Shown: positions 21,315-59,695 of the stretch, in pieces
Position numbering within the stretch: position 1 is the first letter of the stretch
How the letters are laid out: every line of letters starts with the position of its first letter
IMG/VR virus record: IMGVR_UViG_3300040801_004034
Location: 1 to 64,000 of that record
DNA: 64,000 nt
Reading direction: 5' to 3' (one strand)
The notes under the pieces: model-generated
The model's input: only the letters and a program-made list of their open reading frames with translations
Databases searched by the model: none
Told to the model about the DNA's origin: nothing
Position numbers and translations under genes: made by a program

Positions 21315-22045
21315 TATATTTCTTCTAGTTTTACAAAACAAGCAAACGCATTAATTTCTTTGTCCATAACAATTGCATCTTTGTATAAATGCTCACTTAT
21401 ACATAAGATATAACGTTTGCTCTGTTCATCGCTAAGATCTTCACACTTGTAAACATGTTCCAAGTAACCTCTCATCAAGGCATGATAATCACCTTGGAAC
21501 TCGCTGTCATTCTCAATCAAATACTTTCTAAGCTTAAGAGATTTCTTACCTGTAATACATTCATGCATGAATGAGTATATGTTATTGAGATTGGTCAACG
21601 TTTGAATATCTAACTTACCATCAACACAATTTTTCTGTACTTCGTTAATGATCTTACGTATATCTGGAAAGTTATTTTTGATAAGCTTACCAAGCTTTGA
21701 TTTCTGCTCACCACTAACGGTAATACCTTCAGCTGATAAGATATGAGCAACCCTCTTAAGAACATCACCAATATCAGCTGTAAAGTCGAATGACTGTGTT
21801 CTACTCTGAAGGGCTGGAATGATCTTGTGCTTGTAATTAGCTGTAAGTATAAACCTGGTTACCTCACTATACTCTTCAATTGTATTTCGTAGGGCTTTTT
21901 GGCCATCTTTTGAGAGCCCGTCACAATTACTCGTTAATACTTTTTTATTTCCAACAAAGAAATTATGTGTTTCATCAACTGAAAGGTCATAAACTTTCTT
22001 CTTTATACCAATTTTTGTTATTTTTTTAATCTTTAATTTTTGCAT
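21311..22045 (-). CDS. gp44: clamp loader large subunit gp44, C-terminal half preceded by a 40-aa split-intein C fragment
   Basis: VYDLSVDETHNFFVGNKKVLTSN|CDGLSKDGQKALRNTIEEY…FILTAN…ALQSR…FPDIRKIIN. Confidence 0.92.
   Translation of the reverse strand: MQKLKIKKITKIGIKKKVYDLSVDETHNFFVGNKKVLTSNCDGLSKDGQKALRNTIEEYSEVTRFILTANYKHKIIPALQSRTQSFDFTADIGDVLKRVAHILSAEGITVSGEQKSKLGKLIKNNFPDIRKIINEVQKNCVDGKLDIQTLTNLNNIYSFMHECITGKKSLKLRKYLIENDSEFQGDYHALMRGYLEHVYKCEDLSDEQSKRYILCISEHLYKDAIVMDKEINAFACFVKLEEIY
21926..22045 (-). mobile_element. split intein C fragment (40 aa, ends T-S-N; +1 Cys)
   Basis: Intein blocks F/G: VYDLSV…HNF…SN|C. Confidence 0.9.
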
Positions 22046-22970
22046 ATGCCTTTCTCATCATTTTAAGTTGTAATAAATTATCATCTTCAAATTTTGTTTC
22101 GTCAATATATTGTATAATATTTTCTTCATTAATCCATTTAAATGACATTTCATTCTGATCACAATATTCTTGCAATGCTGTCATTTTGTCTATTTCTATA
22201 TTATATCTATTTTTCGGTTTAATTTCATACATTGTACGGGTTTCCGGATCATAAAAATCTGAAATGTATGTTTTGACATCTGTTTTGACTCGTATCGTTT
22301 CATACTCACAATGTTGGTTACATAACCAAAAGCATGCTTCCCACGAACTTCTAAATTTTTTAGTTGTTTCCCCAATTACTATTTTTGCATCCCAGTGTGT
22401 CCATGTATTAGTAATGTTTGGTGTGTATTCACCTGATGCGATTTTCCGTTTCATGGTTCGTGACATTTTCTTTGAACACATCTTTTTATGTTGTTTACCT
22501 TCTTCAGTTTCGTAGAATTTTTTCATACGTTTTGATTTTTTATTCCGCTGAGCTATACCTGCATCTGTCTTATTATATTGTTTAAGTGTTTTACGTATTT
22601 TTTCTATTTCAGATTCAGTTTTTGTGTAATCTCTTAGTTTTGTCCACACACGTTGTTTAATTTCTGATGGCGTATATTTTTTCCAACCGGTCCAACCTTT
22701 AAATGTTCCTGAATAAGAAAAACTATCTTCTGTTAACAAAATTCCAGAATATAAGCTATAGTGCGGTTCTTCGAGTAAAAACAAAAAATGATTAACACTG
22801 GGTTTATCCATCCAGTATACCAAGTTAGTAAACCACAACTTATGTGTATCATATACCTTTTTTGTTACAGGATTATAATAACGTACCTGTTTTTGTTTAT
22901 AATCTTGTACCAAATGTTTTATTGACTCTTTTGAATATGATTTTCTATTCGTTCGATTGCCACCTCTCAT
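22026..22970 (-). mobile_element. free-standing homing endonuclease (NUMOD3-like repeats plus TnsA-like PD-(D/E)XK domain) between the gp44 halves
   Basis: FRSSWE…YE…YISDFY…YEIKP; start placed at ATG 22970, 5 nt after TAAATA. Confidence 0.8.
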
Positions 22971-22974
22971 ATAA

Positions 22975-23316
22975 TTATTTATGACATTCAACAGTAATAC
23001 TATCAACCTTTGTTAAAATTGTATCTATTCCTTTTGAGATCATATCATCTAATTTCATCCTTTCAATCTCACCGTCTTCATTTTCAACATACCATTTATG
23101 ACTACCAGTACATATTATTTTTTCATCATTTTCAAATTCAAGTTCGTAACAATCTTGTTCACCCATGTAAAAATGGCTAAATGGTCTATACTCTATTCTG
23201 TCTTTTATTTGATTATATGACATTACAAGATCATTATCATGATCAAGATCTTTAATAGGTTGAGTACATTTTTTACCATCTCTCAATACATGGACTGGTG
23301 TATTCTCATCAAGACA
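22975..23316 (-). mobile_element. split intein N fragment (113 aa)
   Basis: Block A CLDENT and block B CTGSHKW, followed by a stop codon. Confidence 0.9.
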
Positions 23317-23625
23317 TTCATCAAGCACAATGATCTTCAAATTTTTATCAAACGATTTCGTCTGTGCAAATCCTACAACTTTACTTCTGATAGTATCAAT
23401 ACCGTTTTCGTCAGATGCATTGATATACATATAATCACATTGCAACTTACTAATGATGATTTTCGCAAGCGTTGTTTTACCAATACCTGGTGTACCACAA
23501 AATAACATATGCGGTATTTCAGATGTTATATTTTCAAAATACTTACGATTTTGATTTGACAACACTAAGTCGTCTAATGTTTGAGGTCTGTAACGTTCTG
23601 TCCACAATTGATTAAATTTATCCAT
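22975..23625 (-). CDS. gp44: clamp loader large subunit gp44, N-terminal half followed by a 113-aa split-intein N fragment
   Basis: WTERYRP, GTPGIGKTT, INASDENGID, IIVLDE|CLDENT…IICTGSHKW. Confidence 0.92.
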   Translation of the reverse strand: MDKFNQLWTERYRPQTLDDLVLSNQNRKYFENITSEIPHMLFCGTPGIGKTTLAKIIISKLQCDYMYINASDENGIDTIRSKVVGFAQTKSFDKNLKIIVLDECLDENTPVHVLRDGKKCTQPIKDLDHDNDLVMSYNQIKDRIEYRPFSHFYMGEQDCYELEFENDEKIICTGSHKWYVENEDGEIERMKLDDMISKGIDTILTKVDSITVECHK

Positions 23626-23631
23626 ATTGAT

Positions 23632-23659
23632 ATTATAGTTTATGTTTATGGTTGTTCAA
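23632..23659 (-). promoter_or_regulatory. early promoter TTGAAC-N16-TATAAT, 6 nt before ATG
   Basis: Read directly from the sequence. Confidence 0.75.
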
Positions 23660-23675
23660 TAGATTAAATATTTTT

Positions 23676-23912
23676 ATGTACAAAACAGAACTCGAACTAA
23701 TCAACGAAGCTTACTATAATAGATCAGAGCAGGAATCTGATGAAGTATCAACTCAATATGATGAAATGGTGCCAGTTTCAATGGAAGAAGTGGTACATTA
23801 CTACATCGAAATGGTATCAGATGTTGCCGGAGACGGTCGTGAAGCGACCGAGCTTCGCAAGTTTGCCAATTTCGTTGATAACAATAGTTACGAAATCAGA
23901 GCAAGCGGTTAA
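23676..23912 (+). CDS. small acidic late protein (LINEAYY motif)
   Basis: Start placed at ATG 23676, 5 nt after TAAATA. Confidence 0.6.
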   Translation: MYKTELELINEAYYNRSEQESDEVSTQYDEMVPVSMEEVVHYYIEMVSDVAGDGREATELRKFANFVDNNSYEIRASG

Positions 23913-24154
23913 ATCTTTTTATCTTTGTTTACAGAGAGATTATATGTCCTCAAAACCCATCCAATGGTATAAGCAACGTGCACAGGTGTTGTATACCAAT
24001 ACTCTGTAAGAACAAGCATCATGTACCAAAATGGTTGACTAACCCAACCGAGCACAACACCTATAATCTTCCACTTACGTTGCTCGCTCATAGAGCAAAT
24101 AAATGCAGCAGGACCAAAGATGCCGATACCGAGTTGTGCAATTAAATCAAGCAT
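23909..24154 (-). CDS. small membrane protein
   Basis: 81 aa with two to three hydrophobic segments; coupled to dut by a TGATG overlap. Confidence 0.6.
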   Translation of the reverse strand: MLDLIAQLGIGIFGPAAFICSMSEQRKWKIIGVVLGWVSQPFWYMMLVLTEYWYTTPVHVAYTIGWVLRTYNLSVNKDKKI

Positions 24155-24642
24155 CAGCGACCGCTTGATCCGAAACCGTGTGCGCCTCGTTCTGCCGGGG
24201 TAATTTGATCAGCCCATTCAACTGTTGTTACATAGTTCTTTTCAATCTTAATTTGCGCAACTTTATCACCTTTCTTATAGTGATATGGTATACCTGTCAG
24301 ATTGTATATTTTTACACCAAGATCAGACCTGTAGCCGGTGTCGATTTCCCCGAAGTGTGGTTGAATACCATGTTTAAACCCTAAACCAGACTTTGGTTTA
24401 ATAACAAATCCAAACCCTGGTGTAATGTTACCGACTGTAATACCTGTAGGTACAACAGCGTGCCCGACATCTACACCACCGGTTGTATCAACTTTACTAC
24501 GTGGTATTGTAGTATCCTCTACAGCAAACAGATCGTAACAATTATCATCATGATGGGCCTTTTCAGGTAATTTAGCATCATCATGGGTTTTTACAAATTC
24601 GATTTTACAATCAATACGCTGGATGTTATTTTCTTCATTCAT
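24154..24642 (-). CDS. dut: trimeric dUTPase
   Basis: YDLFA, PKSGLG, GEIDTGYRS, GDKVAQ, RGAHGFGSSG. Confidence 0.95.
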   Translation of the reverse strand: MNEENNIQRIDCKIEFVKTHDDAKLPEKAHHDDNCYDLFAVEDTTIPRSKVDTTGGVDVGHAVVPTGITVGNITPGFGFVIKPKSGLGFKHGIQPHFGEIDTGYRSDLGVKIYNLTGIPYHYKKGDKVAQIKIEKNYVTTVEWADQITPAERGAHGFGSSGR

Positions 24643-24648
24643 ACACCT

Positions 24649-24676
24649 ATTATACAGTATGTGTTTGGTTTATCAA
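24649..24676 (-). promoter_or_regulatory. early promoter TTGATA-N16-TATAAT, 6 nt before ATG
   Basis: Read directly from the sequence. Confidence 0.75.
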
Positions 24677-24697
24677 GATATCGACTAAATATAATAA

Positions 24698-25183
24698 ATG
24701 GATAATGATGAATTAGATGATTCAGTGAATGACCTTATAAGTCAATTACAATCAATAGATAACAATACAGGCGTACAGAAAAGCCAAAAAGAATTGACAC
24801 CTGAAGATGTGGAAAAATTTCTTGTTATGAGTTCTGGTAAGCTTGTTACAGACTCGCTTGATGTTGTAAGTACATTAAAGGAATACGTAAGAAGCTCGCC
24901 AAACCCGGAAGATGTAGAGGCACTTGCAAGAATACTTTCATCAAGTGCAGCAGCTATTGAAACATTGAACAAGATTCATATTAACGAAAGAAAAATCACT
25001 GCTCAACGACAAATCAAAGAGATGGATATTGAGAGTAAAAAAGAAATTGAAGAACAAAGATCTAATGCTGGTGCTCTTACGATAAATCGTGATGAATTAC
25101 TCGATTATATGATCTCTAAAGCTAAAGTAATCGACGCAGATGCAACAGATGCTGAGGTAGCTGAAATTAAAGATGCTACCTAA
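24698..25183 (+). CDS. probable terminase small subunit (gp16-like)
   Basis: 161 aa, helical; SPNPEDVEALARILSS…IETLNKIH and RDELL resemble the gp16 core; late motif upstream. Confidence 0.55.
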   Translation: MDNDELDDSVNDLISQLQSIDNNTGVQKSQKELTPEDVEKFLVMSSGKLVTDSLDVVSTLKEYVRSSPNPEDVEALARILSSSAAAIETLNKIHINERKITAQRQIKEMDIESKKEIEEQRSNAGALTINRDELLDYMISKAKVIDADATDAEVAEIKDAT

Positions 25184-26024
25184 CTGCACTAAGTGAATCA
25201 TTCATTGTAGGCGCCCCCGATTCAATTTTATTCAAAAACATATCTACCTGTGTTGTAATGCCTTCAACATCTAACGTTACTGGGATTAACTTTGCAACGT
25301 TCTCGTTCTCACGAATATTAACATTTTTAATATAAAATATGAACTCACCCATTTCTTTAAGAGCTGAGATAAGACCTTTTTTCGTTTCGTCTTTAAAATC
25401 GAACAATCGCTCATAATACTGATAGTCCACAACATGATTTTTACCATGTGATGTTGTACTATCTGTTTTGGTAACAGACCCGTTTATTCCTTGCAAATTC
25501 TGCTTCATCAGCGCATCAAGATGAAGCGACATTTTAACTTGTAGTAGTTTGTTATGGTTTGTCGTTTTGTTGAATAATGTAACAGGTGTATTCATTACAA
25601 CAGGGGATTCTTCACTGAATATATCAAAGAATGGTGATAAACTGTTGTCAAAGACTGTCGTATGCTCTGTTAACAAACCAATATCATCAGAATACTCAGT
25701 GAAATACTGATTGCTCGAACCTATTATCGTTTGAATTGATTGTTGTAGTGCTGATGATAATGAATTGAATTTCTCAATAAAATGATTTTTAAAATTGTTA
25801 TCAAATAGCTCAAACCGTTCATCATTCAATTGTTTATAAAGTTCAGCTGTAGCTTGTATAGCTTTCGGATCACATTTTTTTGTTTCAAACGCAATGCTTG
25901 AGTCTAATGCATCGATGTATTTGCTGAAGATGTCTAACATGTTACTTGCTGATCTGTAGTATTCAGTTGTCGGTAATACAACAGTATCTACATAAGCTGG
26001 TAATAATGATGTCTGGTATGCCAT
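25176..26024 (-). CDS. hypothetical protein in the tail/baseplate operon
   Basis: 282-aa ORF coupled to the upstream gene by TAATG. Confidence 0.6.
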   Translation of the reverse strand: MAYQTSLLPAYVDTVVLPTTEYYRSASNMLDIFSKYIDALDSSIAFETKKCDPKAIQATAELYKQLNDERFELFDNNFKNHFIEKFNSLSSALQQSIQTIIGSSNQYFTEYSDDIGLLTEHTTVFDNSLSPFFDIFSEESPVVMNTPVTLFNKTTNHNKLLQVKMSLHLDALMKQNLQGINGSVTKTDSTTSHGKNHVVDYQYYERLFDFKDETKKGLISALKEMGEFIFYIKNVNIRENENVAKLIPVTLDVEGITTQVDMFLNKIESGAPTMNDSLSAVR

Positions 26025-37274: not shown

Positions 37275-38054
37275 ATGACACCAGGTAACGAAATTAACGA
37301 CATACCATATTATGGGTATATTTATATGTGGACGGATATTAAACGACAAATGTTCTATATAGGTTCTCATAAAGGCAGCTTTTATGATAGTTATAAAGCT
37401 AGCAATACAAGATTAAAACATGCTATTAGAAAGAGACCAGATACATTCACTGTAAGAGTTATAGAATATGTATGTTGTAATGACCGTCATGAGCTTCATA
37501 AGGTTGAAGAAAAATGGCTTAAATTTTATAATGTCGATGCAAATTATGCTTTCTATAATCATAAAAAAACAGCAAGTGGTGGATCAGGACCATCATCAAG
37601 AAAAGGTTTAACACATAAACAATTTTACGGTGATGATTACATCGATCCAAGAAAGGGTAAAACATTAGAACAAATTTATGGTGATGAAGCTACTGTTGTA
37701 AGGAACCGTTTATCTAAAACATTGCAAGATTATTATATCAAACATGGGCATGGTATCAAAAAAGGCATAACACATGACGGTGTTGATCCTCGTAAAGGTA
37801 AAACATTAGAAGAAATTTATGGTTACAAAAAATATGCAAATCCTCCTAAACCATTTAAGATCATGATATCAATACCTGGTCAGAATAGTGTATATGAAAC
37901 ATTCGAGTCCGAACGAGATTTTTTCAAACGTACATTGTTTGAAGCTACCACACTCGATAAAATTAAAAAAGATAAACGACATACTGTTAAGCGTAGATTA
38001 CCATCAACGAAACATAAATACCCTGTCGGTACTACGTTTTTGTTGTATCCTTAA
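37275..38054 (+). mobile_element. GIY-YIG (Seg-like) free-standing homing endonuclease
   Basis: GYIY…FYIGSH…R…E…FYN; two DPRKGKTLE[Q/E]IYG repeats; start 5 nt after TAAATA; antisense to its neighbours. Confidence 0.85.
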
Positions 38055-38674
38055 ATTAGTTCAATATATAGCTGCGAAAATGCAAACTCAAAAGATGAAT
38101 ACAATTCCGCAGAGTCGTCGTTATCATATGTGTATTCAATTGCACCAACAGATACAGGGAATGCATCTTTGTAAATAAATTTTACAACATTCTTATTATA
38201 TTCATCAATACCATAAACTGTAAATGTCGTCTGGTATTGTTGCGGTGGTGTTGCAGATCGTTTAATTTTACCAACCGTCGGTTTTTGTACGTTTGCAACA
38301 TTATCAGCATCATATACAGAATCTTTCATATCATTCAACAATGATAGCCATCTTTGTAACAACCAATAATTATAATATCTATTATCAACAGGAAATTGTA
38401 CAGTCACATTTTCGTACGGCTCTCTTGTATGTAATGATACCTTCATACTCTGACCAGCATATTTTAAAGTTTCAGAATTTACTTTTGTACTTGGCACTAT
38501 CGTACCCTTAATTGATAGCTGTAGCGAATCAGTTATAATTTCACCTTTATCACTCGTACCAAAATTTTTAGTATTGATATCTCTTAAAGCATCTGGTATA
38601 TCGATAACAAGTCTAAACTTGTCTGTACGTGCTTGGTTAAGCGTTGATTGAATTATCTCCCCCATTGTGTCCAC
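38051..38674 (-). CDS. tail tube terminator/completion protein (gp3-like, tube fold)
   Basis: VQFPVDNRYYNYWLLQRW…FIYKDAFPVSVGAIEY. Confidence 0.6.
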   Translation of the reverse strand: MDTMGEIIQSTLNQARTDKFRLVIDIPDALRDINTKNFGTSDKGEIITDSLQLSIKGTIVPSTKVNSETLKYAGQSMKVSLHTREPYENVTVQFPVDNRYYNYWLLQRWLSLLNDMKDSVYDADNVANVQKPTVGKIKRSATPPQQYQTTFTVYGIDEYNKNVVKFIYKDAFPVSVGAIEYTYDNDDSAELYSSFEFAFSQLYIELI

Positions 38675-39858
38675 CCTTGTTGTTCTAACATTGCCATATC
38701 ATCATCTTGCGACATACCATTATTTATAAGAGCTGGCATCACATCATAATGTTCTTCATTTTCATTACTCATATAACCACCTGGTCTCATAAACTCTTTG
38801 ATACCATAATCATGCTCTTCAAGTAGAAGTGGTTTGTTTGCCTCGTCTCTCTCAACCACTGTAAAATATTGTTCAATCACATCATCTATAAGAATGATTA
38901 AATTCCACATCAATCCAGCAACACGGTCATCGTAAAATCCTGATTTAGCTTGCCATTTCCCGTTCTTACCCTTTGTGAATGTTTTAAGTTCATTGATTAA
39001 ATGAATGTCACGGATACTTACAGCACGTACATTAGTGACCCAATGTCTCATGTTTGTTACACCAATATGTTTTGTGTTAGTATGACTAATTATACCATTT
39101 TGTATTGATTTACGTTTTGCTTTACTGGCGCCCCACGATACTATTTTTTCATAGTTGTGAACATTTTTAAGACCATCAACGACCTGTGCACCACTATTAT
39201 TACGTTCGACACAGACTAAAGGCATTCCCCAGTTTTGTAATATCTCATGTACTTTTTCAACAAAATTATACGGTGCTATTTCATTGTTATGATAACAAGC
39301 AACCTGTTTAATTTCTGTAAGATCTGTATAATCAAAAATTTGCACCACACTAGCATCACGCCCTATACCTTCACTTGTATCAACACTTGCAACATAGATT
39401 TTCTCATCACTTGGTTCTTCCCATATCTTATAATGGCCGTTATCATAAACATATTTTGGTTCATATGTGTTCGATTTCAAAAACTCGAACATTTCCTCAT
39501 TAATAGTCTGATCTGATGAATCAATCCACACACAATTATGGCTATACATATCATTTGTATAATATGCTTTAGTACCATCAACATTTACGATATCGTAAAC
39601 AACACGATCACCACATGGGTGTTTCGAAATAACTTTCTGTAAACCACTTAAGGTTTCCACACCTGTACCTAGTAGTATATCGTTAACTCGTTCAAAACCG
39701 TATTCCGTTTTCAACATATGGTCATACGATGCAGTTAGACTATATACACCACAGTTAATTGATATACATGGTTTTGTTTGCTTAGATATACCATAGAATG
39801 TTTTATATCCTTCTTCAGTCAATACTTTCGTATTGTTAATATTTTTAATGAATTCCAT
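38653..39858 (-). CDS. gp17: terminase large subunit gp17, C-terminal nuclease half preceded by a 108-aa split-intein C fragment
   Basis: VYDIVNV…YSHN|CVWIDSS…VDTSEGIGRD…CVERN…ELKTF…YDDRV. Confidence 0.92.
   Translation of the reverse strand: MEFIKNINNTKVLTEEGYKTFYGISKQTKPCISINCGVYSLTASYDHMLKTEYGFERVNDILLGTGVETLSGLQKVISKHPCGDRVVYDIVNVDGTKAYYTNDMYSHNCVWIDSSDQTINEEMFEFLKSNTYEPKYVYDNGHYKIWEEPSDEKIYVASVDTSEGIGRDASVVQIFDYTDLTEIKQVACYHNNEIAPYNFVEKVHEILQNWGMPLVCVERNNSGAQVVDGLKNVHNYEKIVSWGASKAKRKSIQNGIISHTNTKHIGVTNMRHWVTNVRAVSIRDIHLINELKTFTKGKNGKWQAKSGFYDDRVAGLMWNLIILIDDVIEQYFTVVERDEANKPLLLEEHDYGIKEFMRPGGYMSNENEEHYDVMPALINNGMSQDDDMAMLEQQGWTQWGR
39535..39858 (-). mobile_element. atypical split intein C fragment (108 aa, carries block B and blocks F/G)
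   Basis: KVLTEEG, TASYDH, VYD…SHN|C. Confidence 0.88.
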
Positions 39859-40721
39859 CTTTAGTAATATTTAGGTCGTTAATAGGAGTAATACGATCAT
39901 CATATATGATAACGAAATTACAGTTCAGTTCTTCCTGTATATCCTGTTGTCTCATATGGTCCTTTTTCATTTGACCTGGTGTAAGATGATATGGCTCATA
40001 CACCTCAAAAACAGTGTTCGTTTTATGACAATAACCGTCTGGAAAATAAGAGAGTACTCTAAAATTTCTATCTATTTTAATATTTTGATGTTGTTCATAA
40101 TAATCTAATATATCAGATTCTCTGTATCCTTTATTGATGAATGATGTTATACCTCTCTGTCGTTTTATATTTTGACATTTTTTACCATTTTGTTTATATT
40201 GTGAATTCCATGCGACGATGATATTCAAGATAATGTTTCCTCCAATCGTTCCCGTATGTATACATGAAATGTTCTCGTTTGTTTGGCATTATTCTGCACT
40301 TACCGCAGTATGCTTTTTCTTTAAATTGCTGTGTAGCAGCGTCCCATGTAATTTTCGAACCGCATTTACAATAGTATTTTCTCGGTATATCACCACCACA
40401 AAAACCTAATATAAACAAATGCGCAGAAAAACTCTTCGTTTTGAGTTTATCATGATATTCTATACCGTAATGTTGCACGCTTTTGAATAATGAAATATCA
40501 TCCTTTTGCATTTTTCTATTACCAGATTTACCGAGATATTTTTTCCAATTATCATCTTCTGATAGCATACTAATAGTTTTTTGCTTACTATATAATTGTG
40601 CTTGTTCTAATCGGTTTTTTTGTGTTGTATACCAATTTGTTGTTATTTCACTCTGGTTTTCATTTGCTTTCGCACTGTAGTCTTTCGTAAAGTTCTTCGA
40701 TTGTTTGGGTATATTGTTCAT
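39845..40721 (-). pseudogene. homing endonuclease between the terminase halves, broken into two overlapping frames (40194..40721 and 39845..40228)
   Basis: 5' ORF has CKCG…YCGKC zinc motifs; 3' ORF has a Vsr/PD-(D/E)XK-like YFPDGY…EVYEPYH…KD motif; 35-nt overlap. Confidence 0.65.
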
Positions 40722-40761
40722 TTTTATTACTTAATCGAACAAGAGTGTTTCCAGCGCAACA
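40660..40761 (-). mobile_element. atypically short split intein N fragment (33 aa)
   Basis: CCAGNTLVRL…TIEELYERL then stop; block A only. Confidence 0.88.
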
Positions 40762-41562
40762 ACCAAATTCTTGATCAAACGCTTCTTCACTATCCATACT
40801 AGCTTTTGTAAGCTTTACCCATGCATCATCTCTACCAGGTACTTCATTCCAAAGCACCTTATCACATGCCCAACCATTTGTGTTGTTTTCTGCACCAGTG
40901 AAAAGCTTGTAAAATAAGTTGTCAGTACCATTTGCAGTAGATGCTATAAAAATCTTAGATTTCTTAGAAGATGAAATAACAGGGTATACAGATGACCAGA
41001 ACGGCTTCATAATATGTGGTTCAACGAAAGCCATTTCGTCAATAATAAGAGTACCAACTGCTTGACCACGAGCTGCAGTACCTGTTGTTGTCGAAATATT
41101 AATCTGACTACCATTACTCAATTCAACTGATGTCTTACCATAAGCAACAACACCAGGCTTTAACCAGTTTGGCAATTCTTCGTATGCAAGTCTAACACGA
41201 CCGAGAATTTCAATAGCTGTATCCTCTTTATTTGCTACAATAAGAATACGTTGGTCTTTTTGAAAGCAAGCCACCCATAAAGCGTATATTGTAAAGAGTG
41301 TTGTTTTACCAATCTGTCTAGATGCTAATAATATAAAGAAACGATTTTTGACCATCTTCCTAAGAACCCGGTCCTGAAATTTATGAAGCGTGATAGGTTT
41401 TCTACCTTCGTCAACATTAATAATAGTAAAAAACTTTGAGAAAAAATGAATATCATTTTTTGCTTTAATCAGATCACGCATCATCTCTGGTGTATAATCG
41501 TGTTCAGCTCTCGCGGTAGGCAAATTAGGATTATTTTTGTATGACTGTGTATTTTGCGACAT
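40660..41562 (-). CDS. gp17: terminase large subunit gp17, N-terminal ATPase half followed by a 33-aa split-intein N fragment
   Basis: SRQIGKTT, ARG, IIDEMAF, ASTANG, WNEVPGRD, QEFG|CCAGNTLV…. Confidence 0.93.
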   Translation of the reverse strand: MSQNTQSYKNNPNLPTARAEHDYTPEMMRDLIKAKNDIHFFSKFFTIINVDEGRKPITLHKFQDRVLRKMVKNRFFILLASRQIGKTTLFTIYALWVACFQKDQRILIVANKEDTAIEILGRVRLAYEELPNWLKPGVVAYGKTSVELSNGSQINISTTTGTAARGQAVGTLIIDEMAFVEPHIMKPFWSSVYPVISSSKKSKIFIASTANGTDNLFYKLFTGAENNTNGWACDKVLWNEVPGRDDAWVKLTKASMDSEEAFDQEFGCCAGNTLVRLSNKNEQYTQTIEELYERLQCESK

Positions 41563-45940: not shown

Positions 45941-47065
45941 ATGGTCGATGTAATTGAAAAATACAAACAAGGTTCTTCAATGAGAGAGCTTGCTATAGAG
46001 TACAAATGTTCACAGAACAAAATTAAAAAATATCTTGTTGATAACAATATTACATTACGAACACGATCCCAAGCACTATCAAAGAATACATGCGAACAAT
46101 ATAGAGATGAGATACTTCAAAAGTACGCAGATTCTATAACAATTGGTCGGTTAACAAAAGAGTATAACATACCTAGTCATAAAATACGCGAATTCCTCAA
46201 ATCGAACGATGTTCATGTCCGTACTAAAGAAGAAGAATATATAACCGAATGCGAACAACAAAACATCAATATACAGGACATAGTTCGCAGGTATAATGAA
46301 GATGGTGTACCTGCAAAGGAACTTTCCAGGATTTACAACACATCCCATACACGTATAAAGACAATTTTCAACAAATTCGGTAACGGGTTAAAAACAACGA
46401 AAGAAATTCGTAACAGTAAATGGTATAATGATAAATTATCGAAAACAACAACTAAAATACAAGACCAAACACAGATAGATGATATTCTAGAAATGTACAG
46501 TAATGATGTTAGATGCGAGGATATAGCTGAAAAATATAACATATCTATTGGATCTATTATGAATCTTCTAAACCGTGTTGGTGTTGAGAAACGCTGTAGA
46601 AAACAAGTTGATAAGAATGCAGTAGCTCAACGAGAAGCTACAATGAATGAAAAATACGGTGTATCATATTTTATGCAGGATCCTAAAAACATATACAAAC
46701 CGTATTGTATGTATAGTGTCGAAATTGAGGGTATCGAATATACGAATTTACAAGGTTTTGAAAAACAAGGTATTATATATTTGAATGAATGTTACAACAT
46801 AAACTATAGCGAGATTTTAGCAGGTCGAAACGAACATATACCGACGATAAAATATGTTTCAACAGATAAAAAACAACACTACTATTTTCCTGATATCTAC
46901 ATACCGTCTCAAAATATGTTAATCGAAATCAAATGTGAGTATACATTTTCAACTTCGAAACATATTACAATGCTTAAACACAAAGCATGTAAAGAGCAGG
47001 GGTATAAACACAAAATTATTATATTCAACAACACCGGAACAGAAATAATTGAAACTATAGCTTAA
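45941..47065 (+). mobile_element. putative free-standing homing endonuclease (four HTH repeats plus TnsA-like PD-(D/E)XK domain)
   Basis: Repeated Y..G.s…l…YN HTH units; YYFPDIYIP…LIEIKCEYT; TAAGTA 5 nt upstream. Confidence 0.75.
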
Positions 47066-54210: not shown

Positions 54211-54211
54211 A

Positions 54212-54943: not shown

Positions 54944-55386
54944 ATCTTTTCTTGTTCTTTTAGCTCCGCAACTGTTTTGCTCAATTTGTTAACCCTTGAA
55001 AGAAGCTGTTGTAATGATGATTGTATATCATCAAGTGTACTAAACAACTGACCTTTTTCAGATTCATCAAAATGAAACTCAATTTGATTATCATTGACTG
55101 GTATATTTACACTTTCGGTTTGTTCAACAACTTGAGAAACAGGTTCAGCAATAGTAACAGTTTGTTCAGCTGGCTTTACAGCCGGTACCGGATCATTTAC
55201 CGGTACCGCTGTAGATGTTACAAACTTTTCAAATGCTTGTTTTGCTTTACCAGCACTAGGTTTCAATGTTGTACTCGGGGACGCAAGTAGTGAATCAGCT
55301 TCACGCGCATCCTTGTACATATTACCAAGAAACCCTGTAAGAGCAGCTTTAGCTTCTTCTTGACGTTTCTGTTCGTTGGGATCCAT
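54940..55386 (-). CDS. hypothetical coiled-coil protein
   Basis: Translationally coupled between gp32 and gp45. Confidence 0.65.
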   Translation of the reverse strand: MDPNEQKRQEEAKAALTGFLGNMYKDAREADSLLASPSTTLKPSAGKAKQAFEKFVTSTAVPVNDPVPAVKPAEQTVTIAEPVSQVVEQTESVNIPVNDNQIEFHFDESEKGQLFSTLDDIQSSLQQLLSRVNKLSKTVAELKEQEKI

Positions 55387-56255
55387 TATGAAAGATCAAT
55401 ACCATCAAGAAGCTCTTTCATCTTTGCGTCTTCTTCTTCATTAGAAGCTGCACTTGATTCATCAGGAGCTTTTTCTGATCGTGTGTTTGTTTCAGCATGC
55501 TCAGAAGGCTTGGTTGATTGATTCACTTCACTTGTATCAACCTGTGCCGGTGCACCTTCACAAATGATGTGTTCACGAACCATGTTTTGCAACTCTTCAG
55601 TTGTTTTAACCGGTTGTACACTTGTGAGATCAAATACACTACCAAGAATTTCTTTTTGTTTATCTTTTGTCATACCATCAATTTCTGATGGTAATGTAAA
55701 CTTCGATGAAACATATGTTGGGTAATCACCTTGTTGTTCAACTTTGATACGAAGATTAACACCTTCAGGTCCTAGATCAAATACACGACGACCGAGATCT
55801 TCTGCATCTTCACCACTAATAGCATCAACAACAATCTTATGAATTTGCTTACCATATCGAAGAATTTTTACCTTTCCGTTATTATCAGGATTTTTAGGAT
55901 CATCAATAACATAAACGTTCACAAGCCATTTTTCAGACCAACGAAGCTTTTCAGCTTTATTACGTTGTTCAGGTGTACCTGCTTTATATTTAAATTTGAT
56001 TTCACTAATTGGATCACGTTCACCGAATGTAACCGGGCTTAAAGCTGAAACATATTGTCCAGTTGCAAGACTATTCCATCCATTCATGTAATAATGGAAG
56101 AATGTCTTTTTTGGTTCTTTTGAGAATGGTAAAAGACGTACTAGGTATGTATTACCTGGTTCTGTCTTCAGAAAATCACCATAAGATGATGCTTTGTTAT
56201 CGTCTGCAAGAGCTGATTGAATGCTCTGGAATATATCGTTTGTTACGTTGCTCAT
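55386..56255 (-). CDS. gp32: single-stranded DNA-binding protein gp32
   Basis: VRLLP, NVYVIDDPKNPDNNGKVKILRYGKQI, YVSSKF, acidic tail. Confidence 0.9.
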   Translation of the reverse strand: MSNVTNDIFQSIQSALADDNKASSYGDFLKTEPGNTYLVRLLPFSKEPKKTFFHYYMNGWNSLATGQYVSALSPVTFGERDPISEIKFKYKAGTPEQRNKAEKLRWSEKWLVNVYVIDDPKNPDNNGKVKILRYGKQIHKIVVDAISGEDAEDLGRRVFDLGPEGVNLRIKVEQQGDYPTYVSSKFTLPSEIDGMTKDKQKEILGSVFDLTSVQPVKTTEELQNMVREHIICEGAPAQVDTSEVNQSTKPSEHAETNTRSEKAPDESSAASNEEEDAKMKELLDGIDLS

Positions 56256-56261
56256 AAATCT

Positions 56262-56289
56262 ATTATAAATACTAGGTCGCTGAAATCAA
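56262..56289 (-). promoter_or_regulatory. early promoter TTGATT-N16-TATAAT, 6 nt before ATG
   Basis: Read directly from the sequence. Confidence 0.75.
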
Positions 56290-56904
56290 TACAGCCTTGA
56301 CCTTTTCTACTATTTGTTTTGTTTTTCTACTTGAATAATATTTTGCTCGTATGTAGTTAATACGTGTAAAACATTCACTAAATTCTTGAAGTTCATTGTA
56401 CGAAAATTTTGATAAAACCTTCTCAACCGGAAATGCGAATAATGAGAAGAAATTTATTTTTCGTTGTTTTATATGTTTGAAAAATGCAGGGTATATTGCT
56501 TGTGGTTCAACGTGTGTTATATAATGTTTAATCGATATACCTTGCTCTTTACAATAATTACTGATAAACATAAAACTGTCTCTTACCTTTTCTGTTGTCA
56601 TATCACTATCAGGTTCGTTTAAAAGATATCGATCGTTGTATAATGTATATGTTCGAATTGCTCGTTGAGTCGTATAGAAATCCAACTCAACATATTTTTT
56701 TGTTTGAACAAAAAACGGAGCTTCAAAAAAAGACGTCATATCAACATCAGGGAATTTGAAAAACAGGTCATCAAGCCTTTTGAGTGCTAATTTAACAGTA
56801 TCATCAAGTTTAGTGAAATCTTTACGAGCTTTAAACGGTTTATCGTTTACTCTTTGAAGAACATAAAGGTATGTGTTATATATCTGTTGTTGTTTTAAGT
56901 CCAT
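56272..56904 (-). CDS. possible helicase loader (gp59-like)
   Basis: 210 aa, helical, immediately upstream of gp32 as in T4; assignment rests mainly on synteny. Confidence 0.4.
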   Translation of the reverse strand: MDLKQQQIYNTYLYVLQRVNDKPFKARKDFTKLDDTVKLALKRLDDLFFKFPDVDMTSFFEAPFFVQTKKYVELDFYTTQRAIRTYTLYNDRYLLNEPDSDMTTEKVRDSFMFISNYCKEQGISIKHYITHVEPQAIYPAFFKHIKQRKINFFSLFAFPVEKVLSKFSYNELQEFSECFTRINYIRAKYYSSRKTKQIVEKVKAVLISAT

Positions 56905-57178
56905 CTAACCCGCTAAATTTATTGAGATATTTTGTTACGTATTTACTCTTTGATACTGATGGTTCTGTGTGTATGAATTTTCTGATTGCTTCAAAATCGT
57001 TAGGTTCATCTATTTGCTGTTTATAAATGTCTCTAATCGTTTTATTTTCAAGTATCTTTAGAAACACCGTAGCAAAATTCATCTTTTTATCATATGTTAA
57101 AGATACGAATGAACAAAATGAGTAAAATGAATGATGAAACTCGTCTGTTTCAATATTGGTATATGGAATATATGACAT
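56876..57178 (-). CDS. hypothetical protein
   Basis: Coupled ORF in the replication operon. Confidence 0.6.
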   Translation of the reverse strand: MSYIPYTNIETDEFHHSFYSFCSFVSLTYDKKMNFATVFLKILENKTIRDIYKQQIDEPNDFEAIRKFIHTEPSVSKSKYVTKYLNKFSGLDGLKTTTDI

Positions 57179-58056
57179 TATAAAAGTTTGAGTGTTTTTG
57201 TTAGGTTCATCACGTTTTCATTTAATGCTACACCGGCAGCACATTCGTGACCACCACCTTGTCCTAATTTTTCCGCAAGCTCTCCCATATGTAATTTACA
57301 TTCGTTTGTGCTTCTTAGATATGCTTTCTTCATTTTAGGATTGATTATAAGTATAAAGTCGTATCCGTATTTTTCAAGCATTCTACCTGCTATTTCATTA
57401 GGCCATTTTTCTGCACAGCAGCTTAACATCTTAAACTGTTTATCACCAATAGGTATTTGTGTACCATACATTTTTGTCTGTACTATTATCTGATTGATTT
57501 CATTATGAATAATATGAAGCGCATTTTTATGAAATTTATTAAAGCCGACAAAACCTGTACCGAAATCATCAATAAATTTACCAAGTTTATCACCAGTATA
57601 CCCCCAGTAAATAAAATCTAAATCTTTACTAAACGGAAACTTAAGTGTGTAACTATCGTAATCATCGATTAGTGCAAATAGTGTTACCATTGGTTTTGAA
57701 AGCTTATCTTTAATTTTAAAAACATCACAAATTAGCTTTGTACAAGACGTTTCCATCTTCACAACTTGTTTAGCTATTTTCCAAACATGACTATTCTCAA
57801 CATGTTGTTCATGATGATCAATAACTACCACGTTTGGGTAGTCGCAAATATATGCATAATCATAAATCGGTAAATCACAAATAAACACTTTTGAATATTG
57901 TGAAAAATCAAATTGATCAAAATCCTTCTTGAAACTTTTAACAGTGGTAACCTTATAAACAACTTTATATGTATCTGCTGGCATAGCTTCACGGATTGCA
58001 AGGAATGACCCAGCTCCATCTAAATCTGCATCGACTATGACTAAAATCTTTTTCAT
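57178..58056 (-). CDS. DHH/DHHA1 phosphoesterase
   Basis: DADLDG, ICD, IDHH, DDYD, GGGHECAAG. Confidence 0.9.
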   Translation of the reverse strand: MKKILVIVDADLDGAGSFLAIREAMPADTYKVVYKVTTVKSFKKDFDQFDFSQYSKVFICDLPIYDYAYICDYPNVVVIDHHEQHVENSHVWKIAKQVVKMETSCTKLICDVFKIKDKLSKPMVTLFALIDDYDSYTLKFPFSKDLDFIYWGYTGDKLGKFIDDFGTGFVGFNKFHKNALHIIHNEINQIIVQTKMYGTQIPIGDKQFKMLSCCAEKWPNEIAGRMLEKYGYDFILIINPKMKKAYLRSTNECKLHMGELAEKLGQGGGHECAAGVALNENVMNLTKTLKLL

Positions 58057-58090
58057 TGTAAATAGTTATTTAATAATAGGTTCCTTCAGT

Positions 58091-58477
58091 TCAACTCATT
58101 CTACCTAGTTCATCCGAAACGTCATCAATATCGTTTCTTCTTGCAGCAAGATTATCATCCTCTTCAATCCAAAGCGTGTCATAATTGATTCTCATTGCAT
58201 TACTACCGAAATTCGGTCCGAATCTATTTTTAACTGAACCTATGTTGATAATACCTAGTTCTTTATCTTCAGGAGATTGAAAAATATTGTAAATAGCATC
58301 ACAAGTAGCAGCAAGACCGTATGATTCACTGATTGTATCAAGCCCTGGTGAATTTTGACCATATCCACTATTATGTGTTAGAATTCCATTTGCAAAAAAT
58401 AAATTATCATCCGATACAGATATATCTACTGTTTCAATTTCACCTATTTCTTGTATTTCTACTATTTCATCAACCAT
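58091..58477 (-). CDS. gp41: replicative helicase gp41, C-terminal part preceded by a 36-aa split-intein C fragment
   Basis: TVDISVSDDNLFFANGILTHN|SGYG…SESYGLAATCD…KNRFG; start placed at ATG 58477. Confidence 0.9.
   Translation of the reverse strand: MVDEIVEIQEIGEIETVDISVSDDNLFFANGILTHNSGYGQNSPGLDTISESYGLAATCDAIYNIFQSPEDKELGIINIGSVKNRFGPNFGSNAMRINYDTLWIEEDDNLAARRNDIDDVSDELGRMS
58370..58477 (-). mobile_element. split intein C fragment (gp41-1-like, 36 aa; +1 Ser)
   Basis: Blocks F/G ending THN|S. Confidence 0.9.
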
Positions 58478-59660
58478 AAAGGTGTTGTTTACATTTTTCA
58501 ATTGTTTCATCAGGTTTTTCATTATAATCTTTCTCCCATATTACCAGAACATCAAATCCTAGATTTTTTATTATAGCTTGTTTTTCTGCATCTTCAATCC
58601 AAATTTGCTCACATGTAAGATCATTATAAGGATTAGGTTTATCAGTGTTACGGTAAATATCAGGGTTACCATGGAATACATCACCATTAAATTCAATAAC
58701 TTTTTTTCTATCAACATTTACATAATCATAAAAGAAGCTTCGTTTTTTATGTTGTTTATGAAATTCTTTGTTTTTGATCGCATAATATGTATTTTCAGTG
58801 TTACTATCAATCAACTCAAATAGTTGTTGTGATATTTTTGAGAAACCAGAGACCCCTATAGCGCTGTGTGTACACCAGTGTAAATATTTTCTTTCACCGA
58901 GTTCAATACCGTATTTACTAATATAAAAATCTTTTGTATTCCTAAATCTGCATAGTTCTATATGTTTTTCATATTTTTCAGCGCCTTCTTTTTCACCATA
59001 CTTCCTTTTAAAAGACTGCAGCGATTTATGATCTTTAGCTTGTTTCATTTTTTTCGGACCATCTATAACACCATATTTTTTAATAAACCCTTCTTTTGAA
59101 CTACCGAAATGTAGTTTCATTATTTTTTCGTTGTATAATATTACACCTTCATCTTCTCCGTATTTTTGTATATAACTCTCTAACGTATGTTTTTTCTTTT
59201 CCTTTTCTCTCATCAATCTGAATCTTTTACGACCATCAGCATCACCGTATTTTTTTACAAATCGTTCAATCGTTTTATTACCTTTATTATTTTCACACTT
59301 TTCAGCAAATTTCTCACGTCCTTTTATTTCCCCATATAATTTAACATAATTATCAATAGTATGTGCTTTTTTATTACACGCTTGTTCATACCGTTTTTTA
59401 CCTTCCTTTTCTCCAAACTTTAATATACAACCTTCTAGTGTTGATGCAGATTTATACATTTTATTATATTTTTCTATCTTTTTAAGACGATCTAGCCACG
59501 GAAACGGTATATCATACTCGCAAAATCTTGCTAACTGAACCATTTGCATGATAGATAGTTTTTCATAAACATCTTCAATAATTTGTATTTGTTTCTGCTG
59601 TTGCAGGTCAGGGGTTTTATTACAATGTTTTTTCCAGTTTTTTGACTTGTAGTATACCAT
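58470..59660 (-). mobile_element. free-standing Vsr/DUF559-like homing endonuclease between the gp41 halves
   Basis: About seven KYGExEG repeats; FYD…VIEFNGDVFHGNP…VLVIWEKDY; ATG 59660 lies 6 nt after TAAATA. Confidence 0.85.
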
Positions 59661-59695
59661 AAACATTATTTATGACTGCTACACAGATTAACATG

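What the first reader, a model, noticed from the sequence alone, without database searches (positions are those of the whole stretch)
22026..59672. Intervening endonucleases carry their own late promoter and overlap the essential half-genes
Seen: TAAATA at 22976-22981 overlaps the clamp-loader IntN stop, 5 nt before ATG 22970. TAAGTA at 40728-40733 lies inside the terminase IntN coding sequence, 6 nt before ATG 40721. TAAATA at 59667-59672 is 6 nt before ATG 59660. In all three loci the endonuclease 3' end overlaps the IntC start (20, 14 and 8 nt). Inference: the invaders are hard to delete because they supply promoter or coupling to the essential C-half, and they may give late over-expression of IntC-extein fragments. 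The three nucleases are different (TnsA-like, zinc plus Vsr-like, repeat plus Vsr-like), implying independent invasions.
Basis: partly seen in the sequence, partly recalled or inferred. Interest (0 to 1): 0.6.

Follow-up and report, generated by a model that had tools for sequence, protein, structure and literature searches.

The report
Late-promoter homing endonucleases inside three split-intein genes
Three essential genes of an uncultured T4-like phage (clamp loader, terminase, helicase) are each split by a selfish endonuclease gene that carries the phage's late-promoter box and overlaps the downstream half-gene; this arrangement was described in 2009, so the case is a well-documented new example, not a new principle.

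Summary
All motif coordinates, spacings and the 20/14/8-nt overlaps are as stated. TAAATA is not chance: genome-wide it precedes 55 gene starts with a sharp 5-nt spacing. Those genes include sheath, tube, baseplate, fibre and portal, and the phage encodes a gp55-like late sigma. Eleven of 16 endonuclease-like genes in the 221-kb genome carry the box, against 54 of 347 other genes. It is conserved before endonuclease orthologues that are only 35-62% identical.

The box most likely gives the endonucleases their own late expression, as for T4 I-TevI or Aeh1 mobE. It cannot supply the early need for clamp-loader and helicase C-halves. Both N-halves have sigma-70-like promoters, and no terminators lie in between.

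Overlaps are the genome's normal geometry. It has no Shine-Dalgarno signal, and 128 of 197 promoter-less genes sit within -30..+10 nt of the upstream stop.

"Hard to delete" is not absolute. One relative has a contiguous mini-intein. Another is split without the endonuclease and keeps only its last ~22 codons.

Dassa et al. 2009 already reported late-promoter boxes, overlaps and this model. Possibly new here: a clamp-loader host gene, a TnsA-like fracturing endonuclease, and leaderless promoter geometry.

The parts
22975..23625 (-). Clamp-loader (gp44/RFC-like) N-extein (103 aa) plus IntN (113 aa); the intein sits in the Walker B box (VLDE|C...)
   Evidence: Pfam AAA, Intein_splicing (weak); parts measured
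23632..23659 (-). Sigma-70-like promoter TTGAAC-16-TATAAT, 6 nt before ATG 23625 of the clamp-loader N-half
22976..22981 (-). Late-promoter box TAAATA (as CATAAATA), overlapping the N-half stop, 5 nt before the HEG1 ATG
   Evidence: conserved in L012, L013, L019-L025
22026..22970 (-). HEG1: 314-aa free-standing endonuclease with a TnsA-like PD-(D/E)xK C-terminal domain (D238, E249, K251)
21311..22045 (-). IntC (40 aa, ...VLTSN|CDG) plus clamp-loader C-extein (204 aa); the start lies 20 nt inside HEG1
   Evidence: Pfam Gp44_lid, Intein_splicing
40660..41562 (-). Large terminase N-extein (267 aa) plus short IntN (33 aa, CCAGNTLV...): an atypical split intein
   Evidence: Pfam Terminase_6N
40728..40733 (-). 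TAAGTA variant box inside the IntN codons, 6 nt before ATG 40721
   Evidence: TAAGTA also lies before HEG3-family genes in L107 and L120
40194..40721 (-). HEG2 part 1: 175-aa ORF with a CxC...CxxC zinc finger; overlaps the TerL N-half by 62 nt
39845..40228 (-). HEG2 part 2: 127-aa nuclease ORF in the +1 frame, without an ATG; DUF7487-like; homologous to the single-ORF endonuclease of L016
39868..39873 (-). TAAATA inside HEG2 part 2, 9 nt before the TerL C-half ATG 39858: a candidate own late promoter of the C-half
38653..39858 (-). Long IntC (108 aa, ...YSHN|CVW) plus terminase C-extein (293 aa); the start lies 14 nt inside HEG2 part 2
59696..61030 (-). gp41/DnaB-like helicase N-extein (355 aa) plus IntN (89 aa), inserted at QINR|C
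   Evidence: Pfam DnaB_C, DnaB
61039..61067 (-). Sigma-70-like promoter TTGATA-17-TATAAT (11 of 12 matches), 8 nt before ATG 61030
59667..59672 (-). Late-promoter box TAAATA (as CATAAATA), 6 nt before the HEG3 ATG 59660
   Evidence: conserved in L007-L010, L098-L102, L106, L113
58470..59660 (-). HEG3: 396-aa endonuclease with KYG-type repeats plus a C-terminal EDxHD/Vsr-like nuclease (D312, E323, H330, D357 invariant in the family)
58091..58477 (-). IntC (36 aa, ...ILTHN|SGY) plus helicase C-extein (92 aa); the start ATGGTTGA overlaps the HEG3 stop by 8 nt

Best explanation
These are three 'fractured genes' in the sense of Dassa et al. 2009: an essential gene whose split-intein halves are separated by a free-standing homing-endonuclease gene (HEG). 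They sit in one 221-kb T4-like myophage from a microbial-mat metagenome.

Each HEG is preceded by the phage's T4-type late-promoter box (TAAATA = positions -11 to -6). The box is placed so that transcription would start on or next to the A of the HEG's ATG, giving a leaderless mRNA. The box gives the HEG its own gp55-dependent late expression. This matches most other HEG-like genes of this genome and the pattern shown experimentally for T4 I-TevI/II/III, segB and Aeh1 mobE.

The essential halves are expressed differently. The N-half has a sigma-70-like promoter (loci 1 and 3) or a late-type box (terminase). With no terminator in between, that transcript reads through the HEG into the C-half. 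The C-half AUG, supplied by the last codons of the HEG cassette, is then used either by termination-reinitiation coupling or by direct initiation in an unstructured A-rich region. One of these two routes serves most promoter-less genes of this genome, which lacks Shine-Dalgarno signals. Late transcripts from the HEG box also carry the C-half, so extra C-half late in infection is a by-product.

Shown: the anatomy, the motif statistics, the conservation, the gene classes and the HEG families.

Inferred: the transcription start sites, the timing, read-through and the mode of C-half translation.
For: Anatomy.

Motif-to-start association with a peak at N5, against controls.

Late-class genes are tail sheath, baseplate wedge, tail fibre, tail tube, portal and head-tail adaptor.

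A gp55-like late sigma lies at genome 77787-78275 (phrog_234, E 1e-22).

The T4 late box spans -13..-6 (PMC2988020), so N5 puts +1 on the ATG.

11 of 16 HEG-like ORFs carry the box against 54 of 347 other genes (Fisher OR 11.9, p 6e-6).

The box is conserved before HEG orthologues at 35-62% identity while flanking bases differ. In wider families, TAAATA lies within 32 nt upstream in 14 of 52 and 25 of 65 loci, against 18 of 174 and 15 of 152 control ORFs.

Sigma-70-like promoters lie at both replication N-halves and there are no terminators.

There is no SD signal (G about 10% at -5..-15).

Promoter-bearing genes almost never overlap their upstream gene (0 of 34 late-box genes, 2 of 35 TATAAT genes). 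In contrast, 128 of 197 promoter-less genes lie within -30..+10 nt of it, and 8-nt overlaps occur 12 times.

Regions around the C-half starts fold less well than shuffles (z +0.6, +0.6, +2.25).

Precedent: PMC2677866, PMC2988022.
Against: There are no RNA data. Only DNA runs of one sample hold the phage, so no TSS, timing or read-through has been observed.

The fixed distance to the ATG could also fit a translation or RNA-processing signal.

One late-class gene is a ribonucleotide reductase, so the class is not purely structural.

L011 has TATAAT-N3 instead of TAAATA before its HEG1 orthologue.

The classical RBS-sequestering hairpin of T4 HEGs is absent, so how HEG translation is kept low on early read-through RNA is unexplained.

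If the C-half depends on coupling to HEG translation, the HEG would have to be translated early too.
Confidence: 0.7

Rival explanations
1. The endonuclease cassettes are retained because the essential C-half depends on them for its promoter and/or translational coupling. Deleting the HEG would therefore kill the phage.
For: Overlaps are conserved in nearly all relatives: 48 of 52 and 59 of 65 loci have an overlapping or abutting downstream gene.

The IntC ATG is built from conserved HEG codons, e.g. ...KAY = GCA TAT G.

The HEGs are intact and as conserved as the exteins. At the clamp loader the HEG is 51-62% identical against 44-59% for the exteins. At gp41 the HEG is 44-46% against 46-52%.

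The TerL C-half has TAAATA-N9-ATG inside HEG2.

HEG2 is frameshifted, yet its DNA is kept.

The HEG-deleted relative L237 kept exactly the last ~22 HEG codons upstream of the IntC ATG.

Dassa et al. proposed the same model.
Against: A late promoter cannot serve proteins needed for replication, which precedes T4-type late transcription.

In L237 the late box and the HEG ORF are gone, and the remnant has no ATG. Neither the HEG promoter nor coupling to HEG translation is therefore required there.

L188 carries a contiguous mini-intein without a HEG and is 73-87% identical to a fractured relative.

Of 80 clamp-loader relatives, 69 are intein-less.

The late box is common to the genome's other HEG-like genes.

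Overlap is the genome norm.
Confidence: 0.2
2. The TAAATA/TAAGTA hexamers upstream of the three HEGs are chance matches in an AT-rich (35% GC) genome and have no function.
For: TAAATA occurs 303 times in the genome, and TAAGTA is off-consensus. The locus-2 motif lies in coding sequence.
Against: The spacing peak is sharp at N5 (40 genes), against 0-10% association and no peak for permuted or variant hexamers.

The box is conserved before diverged orthologues while neighbouring bases vary.

HEG-like genes are enriched for it (p 6e-6).
Confidence: 0.03
3. The box is not a promoter. It is a translation-initiation or RNA-processing signal placed at a fixed distance from the AUG in a phage that lacks Shine-Dalgarno sequences.
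For: The distance to the ATG is fixed, the genome has no SD signal, and upstream regions are A/T-rich. No TSS data exist.
Against: The box matches the T4 late consensus, and the phage has a gp55 homologue.

A second gene class has TATAAT at N6 with -35-like TTGA at 16-17 nt, or GGAAC at 5-6 nt. That is promoter architecture.

Box-bearing genes avoid overlap with upstream genes, as expected for transcription-unit starts.

In SD-using relatives the same box sits 17-23 nt upstream with an SD in between.
Confidence: 0.07

Closest known systems
Fractured genes of Dassa, London, Stoddard & Pietrokovski 2009 (NAR 37:2560; PMC2677866)
   Same: Split-intein halves of an essential phage gene are separated by a free-standing HEG. 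A TATAAATA late-promoter element lies upstream of the HEG (10 loci in the paper). The HEG 3' end overlaps the IntC start by 6-69 bp (15 of 26 loci). In their model the HEG cassette brings the stop, start and control signals. gp41 and terminase are host genes, and the HEGs are Vsr-like.
   Different: A clamp loader is not among the host genes that paper names. A TnsA-like HEG family is not among its two families (GIY-YIG and Vsr-like). No significant hairpin surrounds the start here. There is no SD, and the box sits 5-6 nt from the ATG (leaderless geometry). Three such loci lie in one complete genome.
T4-family HEG regulation: I-TevI/II/III, segB, Aeh1 mobE inside nrdA (Edgell, Gibb & Belfort 2010, PMC2988022; Gibb & Edgell 2007)
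   Same: The HEG is embedded in or between early or middle genes. It has its own late promoter immediately upstream and is co-transcribed with the host gene. Overlaps and translational coupling are discussed there. In Aeh1, mobE splits nrdA into two genes.
   Different: In those phages an RNA hairpin hides the SD on early transcripts. Here there is no SD and no significant hairpin. The Aeh1 NrdA halves assemble without an intein.
AceL-TerL / GOS-TerL / Cat-TerL atypical naturally split inteins (summarised in PMC11766414)
   Same: The host is the large terminase. IntN is very short (33 aa here; 25-37 aa in the known ones) and IntC is long (108 aa here; 104-115 aa). Both have Cys1 and Cys+1.
   Different: Homology to those inteins was not tested here, because their sequences were not at hand. 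The intervening nuclease here is frameshifted.

Membership tests
Fractured gene (split intein + intervening free-standing HEG) | The host gene is encoded by two adjacent same-strand ORFs whose exteins together make the full protein | tested here: met
   Clamp loader: AAA then Gp44_lid. TerL: Terminase_6N then terminase PHROG. gp41: DnaB_C then the helicase C-end..
Fractured gene (split intein + intervening free-standing HEG) | The N-part ends in IntN (Cys1 block) and the C-part begins with IntC ending in (H/S)N followed by Cys or Ser | tested here: met
   Pfam Intein_splicing gives sub-threshold hits on 4 of 6 halves. Junctions read directly are LDE|C...TSN|C, FG|C...SHN|C and NR|C...THN|S. 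The intein blocks are conserved in relatives.
Fractured gene (split intein + intervening free-standing HEG) | A free-standing endonuclease ORF lies between the halves | tested here: met
   HEG1, HEG2 (two ORFs) and HEG3.
Fractured gene (split intein + intervening free-standing HEG) | The halves are ligated by protein trans-splicing | not testable with these tools
   This needs expression of the halves.
T4-type late promoter | A TATAAATA-like box with no -35 element | tested here: met
   CATAAATA occurs at loci 1 and 3. Locus 2 has the variant TTAAGTA. The genome consensus is tTAAATAAT.
T4-type late promoter | Precedes late (virion) genes, and the phage encodes gp55 | tested here: met
   One RNR gene also carries the box.
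T4-type late promoter | Transcripts start about 6 nt downstream, late in infection | not testable with these tools
   No RNA run holds this phage.
Hairpin-gated HEG translation (I-TevI / mobE type) | A stable RNA hairpin sequesters the SD or start on read-through transcripts | tested here: not met
   Folding z-scores are -0.34, -0.86 and +0.70. Only weak 7-bp AU stems touch the AUG at loci 2 and 3, and there is no SD.
TnsA-like PD-(D/E)xK endonuclease (HEG1) | Pfam Tn7_TnsA-like_N match above the gathering score | tested here: inconclusive
   The window protein scores 17.8 bits (E 7e-4), below the 26.5-bit cut-off. 10 of 27 family members match at E <= 0.01, the best at 2e-5.
TnsA-like PD-(D/E)xK endonuclease (HEG1) | Catalytic D...E-x-K motif and a TnsA-like fold | tested here: met
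   D238, E249 and K251 are invariant in 27 sequences. The model has pLDDT 89. Residues 170-298 align to TnsA 1t0f_B (Z 8.1, rmsd 3.0, 116 aligned) and 1f1z (Z 8.0); the next hit is Z 6.5. Z of about 8 is borderline by the tool's own note.
EDxHD / Vsr-like homing endonuclease (HEG3) | A conserved E-(x3)-D-x2-H ... D motif in a Vsr-like domain | tested here: met
   IEFNGDxFH plus D357. D312, E323, G326, H330 and D357 are invariant in 25 sequences.
EDxHD / Vsr-like homing endonuclease (HEG3) | A Pfam Vsr-fold family match above cut-off | tested here: inconclusive
   MTES_1575 scores 20.5 bits (cut-off 38.2) and DUF559 scores 18.2 bits (cut-off 20.6). 8 of 25 relatives match each family. Some sources name relatives 'very short patch repair endonuclease'.
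Atypical TerL split intein (AceL/GOS/Cat-TerL group) | IntN of about 25-37 aa, IntC of about 104-115 aa, Cys1 and Cys+1, in the large terminase | tested here: met
   IntN is 33 aa and IntC is 108 aa, with junctions C...HN|C. Reference values come from PMC11766414.
Atypical TerL split intein (AceL/GOS/Cat-TerL group) | Sequence homology to AceL-TerL | not tested
   No reference sequence was available from a tool. A resemblance recalled from memory was not used.

The most novel reading that the evidence does not exclude
In this phage all three promoter classes are set 5-6 nt from the ATG, so that mRNAs are leaderless. The classes are TTGA-N16/17-TATAAT, GGAAC-N5/6-TATAAT and the late TAAATA box. 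Leaderless initiation itself would then replace the classical RBS-hiding hairpin. On early read-through RNA, the HEG AUG is an internal, SD-less codon and stays silent. The late leaderless transcript is the only form that is translated. This would be a new way to time a selfish gene inside an essential operon. It would also be a rare case of a T4-like phage built on leaderless expression.
Probability: 0.3. Interest if true: 0.6.

Novelty: new member of a known kind. Interest (0 to 1): 0.33.

Why it matters
The finding shows the 2009 fractured-gene arrangement in a complete genome, where the metagenomic fragments of that study could not show it. The genome has three fractured essential genes, 16 endonuclease-like genes and a fourth, contiguous, intein.

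Having the whole genome makes two things possible. The promoter claim can be tested statistically genome-wide. The relatives also supply natural experiments: a pre- or post-invasion mini-intein, and a HEG deletion that keeps only the 3' tail. These separate what the host gene needs (the IntC start region) from what the selfish gene needs (its late promoter).

It also adds candidates for the split-intein toolbox: a clamp-loader split intein and another short-IntN terminase intein. The leaderless layout, if real, is of wider interest for phage gene expression.

Tried and rejected
- RNA evidence: only four DNA runs of one microbial-mat sample hold the phage. Laying their contigs on 20500-26000 showed no variants or joints. 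This says nothing about expression and little about HEG-less alleles.
- Hairpins as in T4 and Dassa 2009: not significant.
- Close annotated phages: none. One 104-nt blastn hit and no tblastn hit in 50,697 phage records.
- Single-protein scans for HEG3, ORF175 and the gp41 C-half found only the same virus or nothing. The word search on the TerL IntC region found nothing. Locus 2 therefore lacks close orthologues, and TAAGTA there rests on genome-wide and cross-family evidence only.
- PDB sequence searches for the nucleases: nothing significant.
- Foldseek on the HEG1 model: no hit at E <= 0.001. The VIA second look gave TnsA.
- The 12-nt identity GTCATAAATAAT between loci 1 and 3: judged borderline chance, because no base preference before ATAAATA is seen. 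An I-TevI-like operator was not pursued.
- Internal sigma-70-like promoters in the HEG 3' ends (22105-22077 TTGACG-17-GATAAT; 58597-58570): the counts are not above shuffles in locus 1, so no claim is made.
- A possible similarity between the HEG3 C-end and the ORF127 N-end (14 columns, E 0.011): not significant.
The halves were searched separately by reference.

Full report
**What the window is.** The window is the first 64 kb of a single 221,292-bp IMG/VR virus record (35.5% GC, CheckV 100% complete). The same virus occurs at 100% identity on other contigs and in four DNA runs of one microbial-mat sample. It is a divergent T4-like myophage. It has a tail sheath, baseplate wedge, tail fibre, tail tube, portal and head-tail adaptor. 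It also has a gp55-like late sigma factor at genome 77787-78275 (phrog_234, E 1e-22). No annotated phage is close to it.

- Locus 1: clamp-loader N-extein+IntN 22975-23625, HEG1 22026-22970, IntC+C-extein 21311-22045.
- Locus 2: terminase N-extein with a 33-aa IntN 40660-41562, two nuclease ORFs (40194-40721 and 39845-40228), then a 108-aa IntC plus C-extein 38653-39858.
- Locus 3: gp41 helicase N-extein+IntN 59696-61030, HEG3 58470-59660, IntC+C-extein 58091-58477.

- TAAATA 22981-22976 overlaps the TAA stop and is 5 nt from ATG 22970.
- TAAGTA 40733-40728 lies in the IntN codons, 6 nt from ATG 40721.
- TAAATA 59672-59667 is 6 nt from ATG 59660.

The overlaps are 20 nt, 14 nt and 8 nt. The 8-nt value depends on the start ATG 58477, which orthologues support. 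One correction is needed. The locus-2 nuclease is split by a +1 frameshift into a zinc-finger ORF and an ATG-less nuclease ORF. The frameshift is identical in three assemblies. In the relative L016 the homologous nuclease is a single ORF.

**Is the motif real?** Yes.

- Genome-wide, 87 of 303 TAAATA copies are followed within 20 nt by the ATG of an ORF of 60 or more codons, and 40 of these are at exactly 5 nt. Permuted and one-base-variant hexamers show 0-10% association and no spacing peak.
- TAAGTA behaves as a weaker variant. It shows a peak at 5 nt, and nine called genes carry it, typically as GATTAAGTA, which is the form at locus 2.
- The T4 late box spans -13 to -6 (PMC2988020). TAAATA-N5-ATG therefore places +1 on the A of the ATG.
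- A second class of about 50 genes has TATAAT-N6-ATG. It is preceded either by TTGA at 16-17 nt or by GGAAC at 5-6 nt.
- There is no Shine-Dalgarno signal: G is about 10% at -5..-15.
- Genes with either box almost never overlap the upstream gene, whereas promoter-less genes usually abut or overlap it.

Together these results indicate promoters that produce leaderless mRNAs. This is an inference, because no RNA data exist.

**Whose promoter is it?** Sixteen ORFs in the genome look like homing endonucleases: DUF7487 x5, HNH x3, GIY-YIG x5, TnsA-like x2 and EDxHD x1. Eleven carry TAAATA or TAAGTA at 4-8 nt, against 54 of 347 other genes (odds ratio 11.9, p 6e-6). The box is therefore a property of endonuclease genes in this phage, not of fractured loci.

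It is also conserved in relatives.

- Orthologues of HEG3 at 35-46% identity (L007-L010, L098-L102, L106, L113) all have TAAATA at 5-7 nt in otherwise unrelated intergenic sequence.
- L107 and L120 have TAAGTA.
- HEG1 orthologues at 41-62% identity have TAAATA at 5-8 nt in L012, L013 and L019-L025. L011 instead has TATAAT-N3.
- In SD-using relatives the box sits 17-23 nt upstream, with an SD between it and the ATG.
- Over the wider families, TAAATA lies within 32 nt upstream in 14 of 52 and 25 of 65 distinct loci. Control ORFs give 18 of 174 and 15 of 152.

**How the halves are probably expressed.** Both replication N-halves carry the best sigma-70-like promoters of their loci: TTGAAC-16-TATAAT-N6-ATG 23625 and TTGATA-17-TATAAT-N8-ATG 61030. 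No intrinsic terminator is predicted anywhere in the three loci. Clamp loader and helicase are needed for replication, which precedes T4-type late transcription. The late box therefore cannot be what supplies the essential C-halves. Read-through from the N-half promoter is the economical reading.

The overlaps fall within the genome's usual range. Among 197 promoter-less same-strand genes, 77 overlap the upstream gene (4 nt x24, 1 nt x13, 8 nt x12, and 11, 14 and 17 nt x4 each). A further 51 lie within 10 nt. The RNA around the C-half starts is less structured than shuffled controls. That fits either coupling or direct initiation.

The terminase locus is late throughout. Its C-half additionally has TAAATA-N9-ATG inside the nuclease ORF.

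**Is the endonuclease hard to lose?** The evidence points both ways.

For retention:
- The HEGs are intact in nearly all relatives.
- They are as conserved as the exteins. At the clamp loader, HEG identity is 51-62% against 44-59% for the exteins. At gp41 it is 44-46% against 46-52%.
- The IntC ATG is made of conserved HEG codons.

Against an absolute barrier:
- Of 80 clamp-loader relatives, 69 are contiguous and intein-less.
- L188 has a contiguous 149-aa mini-intein at the same site. It is 73-87% identical to the fractured L012 in all parts.
- L237 is split but has no HEG. A 64-nt spacer separates the halves. Its reading frame is recognisably the last ~22 codons of a HEG1-family gene: local alignment score 52, against 28 and 23 in the other frames. 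It ends at a stop inside the IntC codons and contains no ATG.

L237 shows that the late box, the HEG ORF and coupling to HEG translation are dispensable. The 3' tail carrying the IntC start region was kept. This is a single case.

**The three nucleases.** They share no sequence or profile similarity.

- HEG1: relatives hit Pfam TnsA-like_N (10 of 27). D238, E249 and K251 are invariant. A confident model (pLDDT 89) aligns best to TnsA (Z 8.1 and 8.0; the next hit is Z 6.5).
- HEG3: it has repeated KYG modules and the E...GD..H...D motif of the EDxHD/Vsr-like family. Its Pfam hits to Vsr-fold families are sub-threshold.
- HEG2: its nuclease part is DUF7487-like and homologous to the L016 nuclease.
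- HEG1-family nucleases also occur next to unfractured clamp-loader genes and in terminase and other fractured loci.

Independent invasions are the reasonable reading.

**Comparison with what is known.** Dassa et al. 2009 (PMC2677866) described this arrangement. They reported the TATAAATA element upstream of the endonuclease in ten loci and 6-69 bp overlaps in 15 of 26 loci. They also proposed that the invading cassette brings the stop, the start and possibly the promoter for the downstream half. The T4 literature (PMC2988022) shows late promoters before I-TevI/II/III, segB and Aeh1 mobE. The short-IntN terminase intein resembles the AceL/GOS/Cat-TerL group in its architecture (PMC11766414).

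Four things may be new here:
- A clamp loader as host gene. No paper in the searchable library pairs a phage clamp loader with a split intein. That library is incomplete.
- A TnsA-like family as the fracturing endonuclease.
- The lack of a hairpin or SD, combined with the leaderless geometry.
- Three fractured genes in one complete genome.

**Verdict.** This is a new member of a known kind, of modest interest. I did not build joined extein sequences.

Noticed in passing
whole genome G000; examples in the window at 23625, 24642, 53482, 56255, 61030 (minus-strand starts): About 50 genes have TATAAT exactly 6 nt before the ATG, and 40 have TAAATA exactly 5 nt before it. There is no Shine-Dalgarno signal (G about 10% at -5..-15). 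The whole phage seems built on leaderless mRNAs. A library search found no description of this for a T4-like phage.
   Followed up: partly
genome 134-215 kb (outside the window), e.g. starts 193358, 196229, 199066: A third promoter-like class, GGAAC(C/A)-N5/6-TATAAT-N6-ATG, precedes dozens of small ORFs of 60-170 aa. It is possibly a phage-specific early or middle class with its own activator box.
   Followed up: no
window 39845-40721 (-): The terminase-locus endonuclease is broken by a +1 frameshift into a zinc-finger ORF and an ATG-less nuclease ORF. The frameshift is identical in three assemblies. GGAGG lies 9-10 nt before a TTG at 40228, which is unusual in this SD-less genome. Decay or programmed recoding is undecided.
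   Followed up: partly
genome 116694-119900 (+), locus L179: A 1068-aa ribonucleotide reductase carries a contiguous intein (YN|CFSGDT ... VTGN|C) with a LAGLIDADG-like segment (GYLDADGS). It is a fourth intein in this phage, and the gene is preceded by TAAATA-N5.
   Followed up: partly
window 37275-38054 (+), 45941-47065 (+), 62008-62823 (+); genome 66436, 74092, 79751, 82188, 122503, 130932, 134861, 153220, 154438, 176353: Thirteen further endonuclease-like ORFs (GIY-YIG, HNH, DUF7487, TnsA-like) are scattered through the genome. This is an unusually heavy load of homing-endonuclease genes.
   Followed up: partly
L016:435-3885: In a related phage the terminase is fractured at another site (Walker B, GRGSS|C ... 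HN|CLLVDEADF). There the endonuclease, IntC and C-extein form one 911-aa open frame, so the 'overlap' has become an in-frame fusion.
   Followed up: partly
L006:2040-3842: A gp41 helicase carries a contiguous mini-intein whose IntC part is 76% identical in DNA to the window's. It is inserted about 17 residues further downstream in the helicase. Related inteins therefore occupy different sites.
   Followed up: no
L237:1919-3173: The clamp loader is split by an intein with no endonuclease. The 64-nt spacer is the remnant of the last ~22 codons of a HEG1-family gene. This is a natural deletion derivative.
   Followed up: yes
L053, L055-L061, L066: HEG1-family nucleases sit just upstream of, and overlap the start of, intact (unfractured) clamp-loader genes. 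This is a possible free-standing precursor state of the fracturing element.
   Followed up: no
many loci, e.g. L037, L050, L053, L058, L111, L128, L138, L164: In other phage lineages the endonuclease genes are preceded by (C)ATATTTAT(T/A)ATAAA 15-20 nt before the ATG, often with a T-run about 15 nt further up. TATTTAT lies within 45 nt upstream in 25 of 52 and 13 of 65 loci, against 12 of 222 and 6 of 205 control ORFs. It may be a different promoter type or the complementary arm of the hairpins reported in 2009.
   Followed up: partly
window 22971-22982 and 59663-59674 (-): The two TAAATA boxes share 12 identical bases (GTCATAAATAAT). The probability is borderline. An I-TevI-style operator was not tested.
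   Followed up: no
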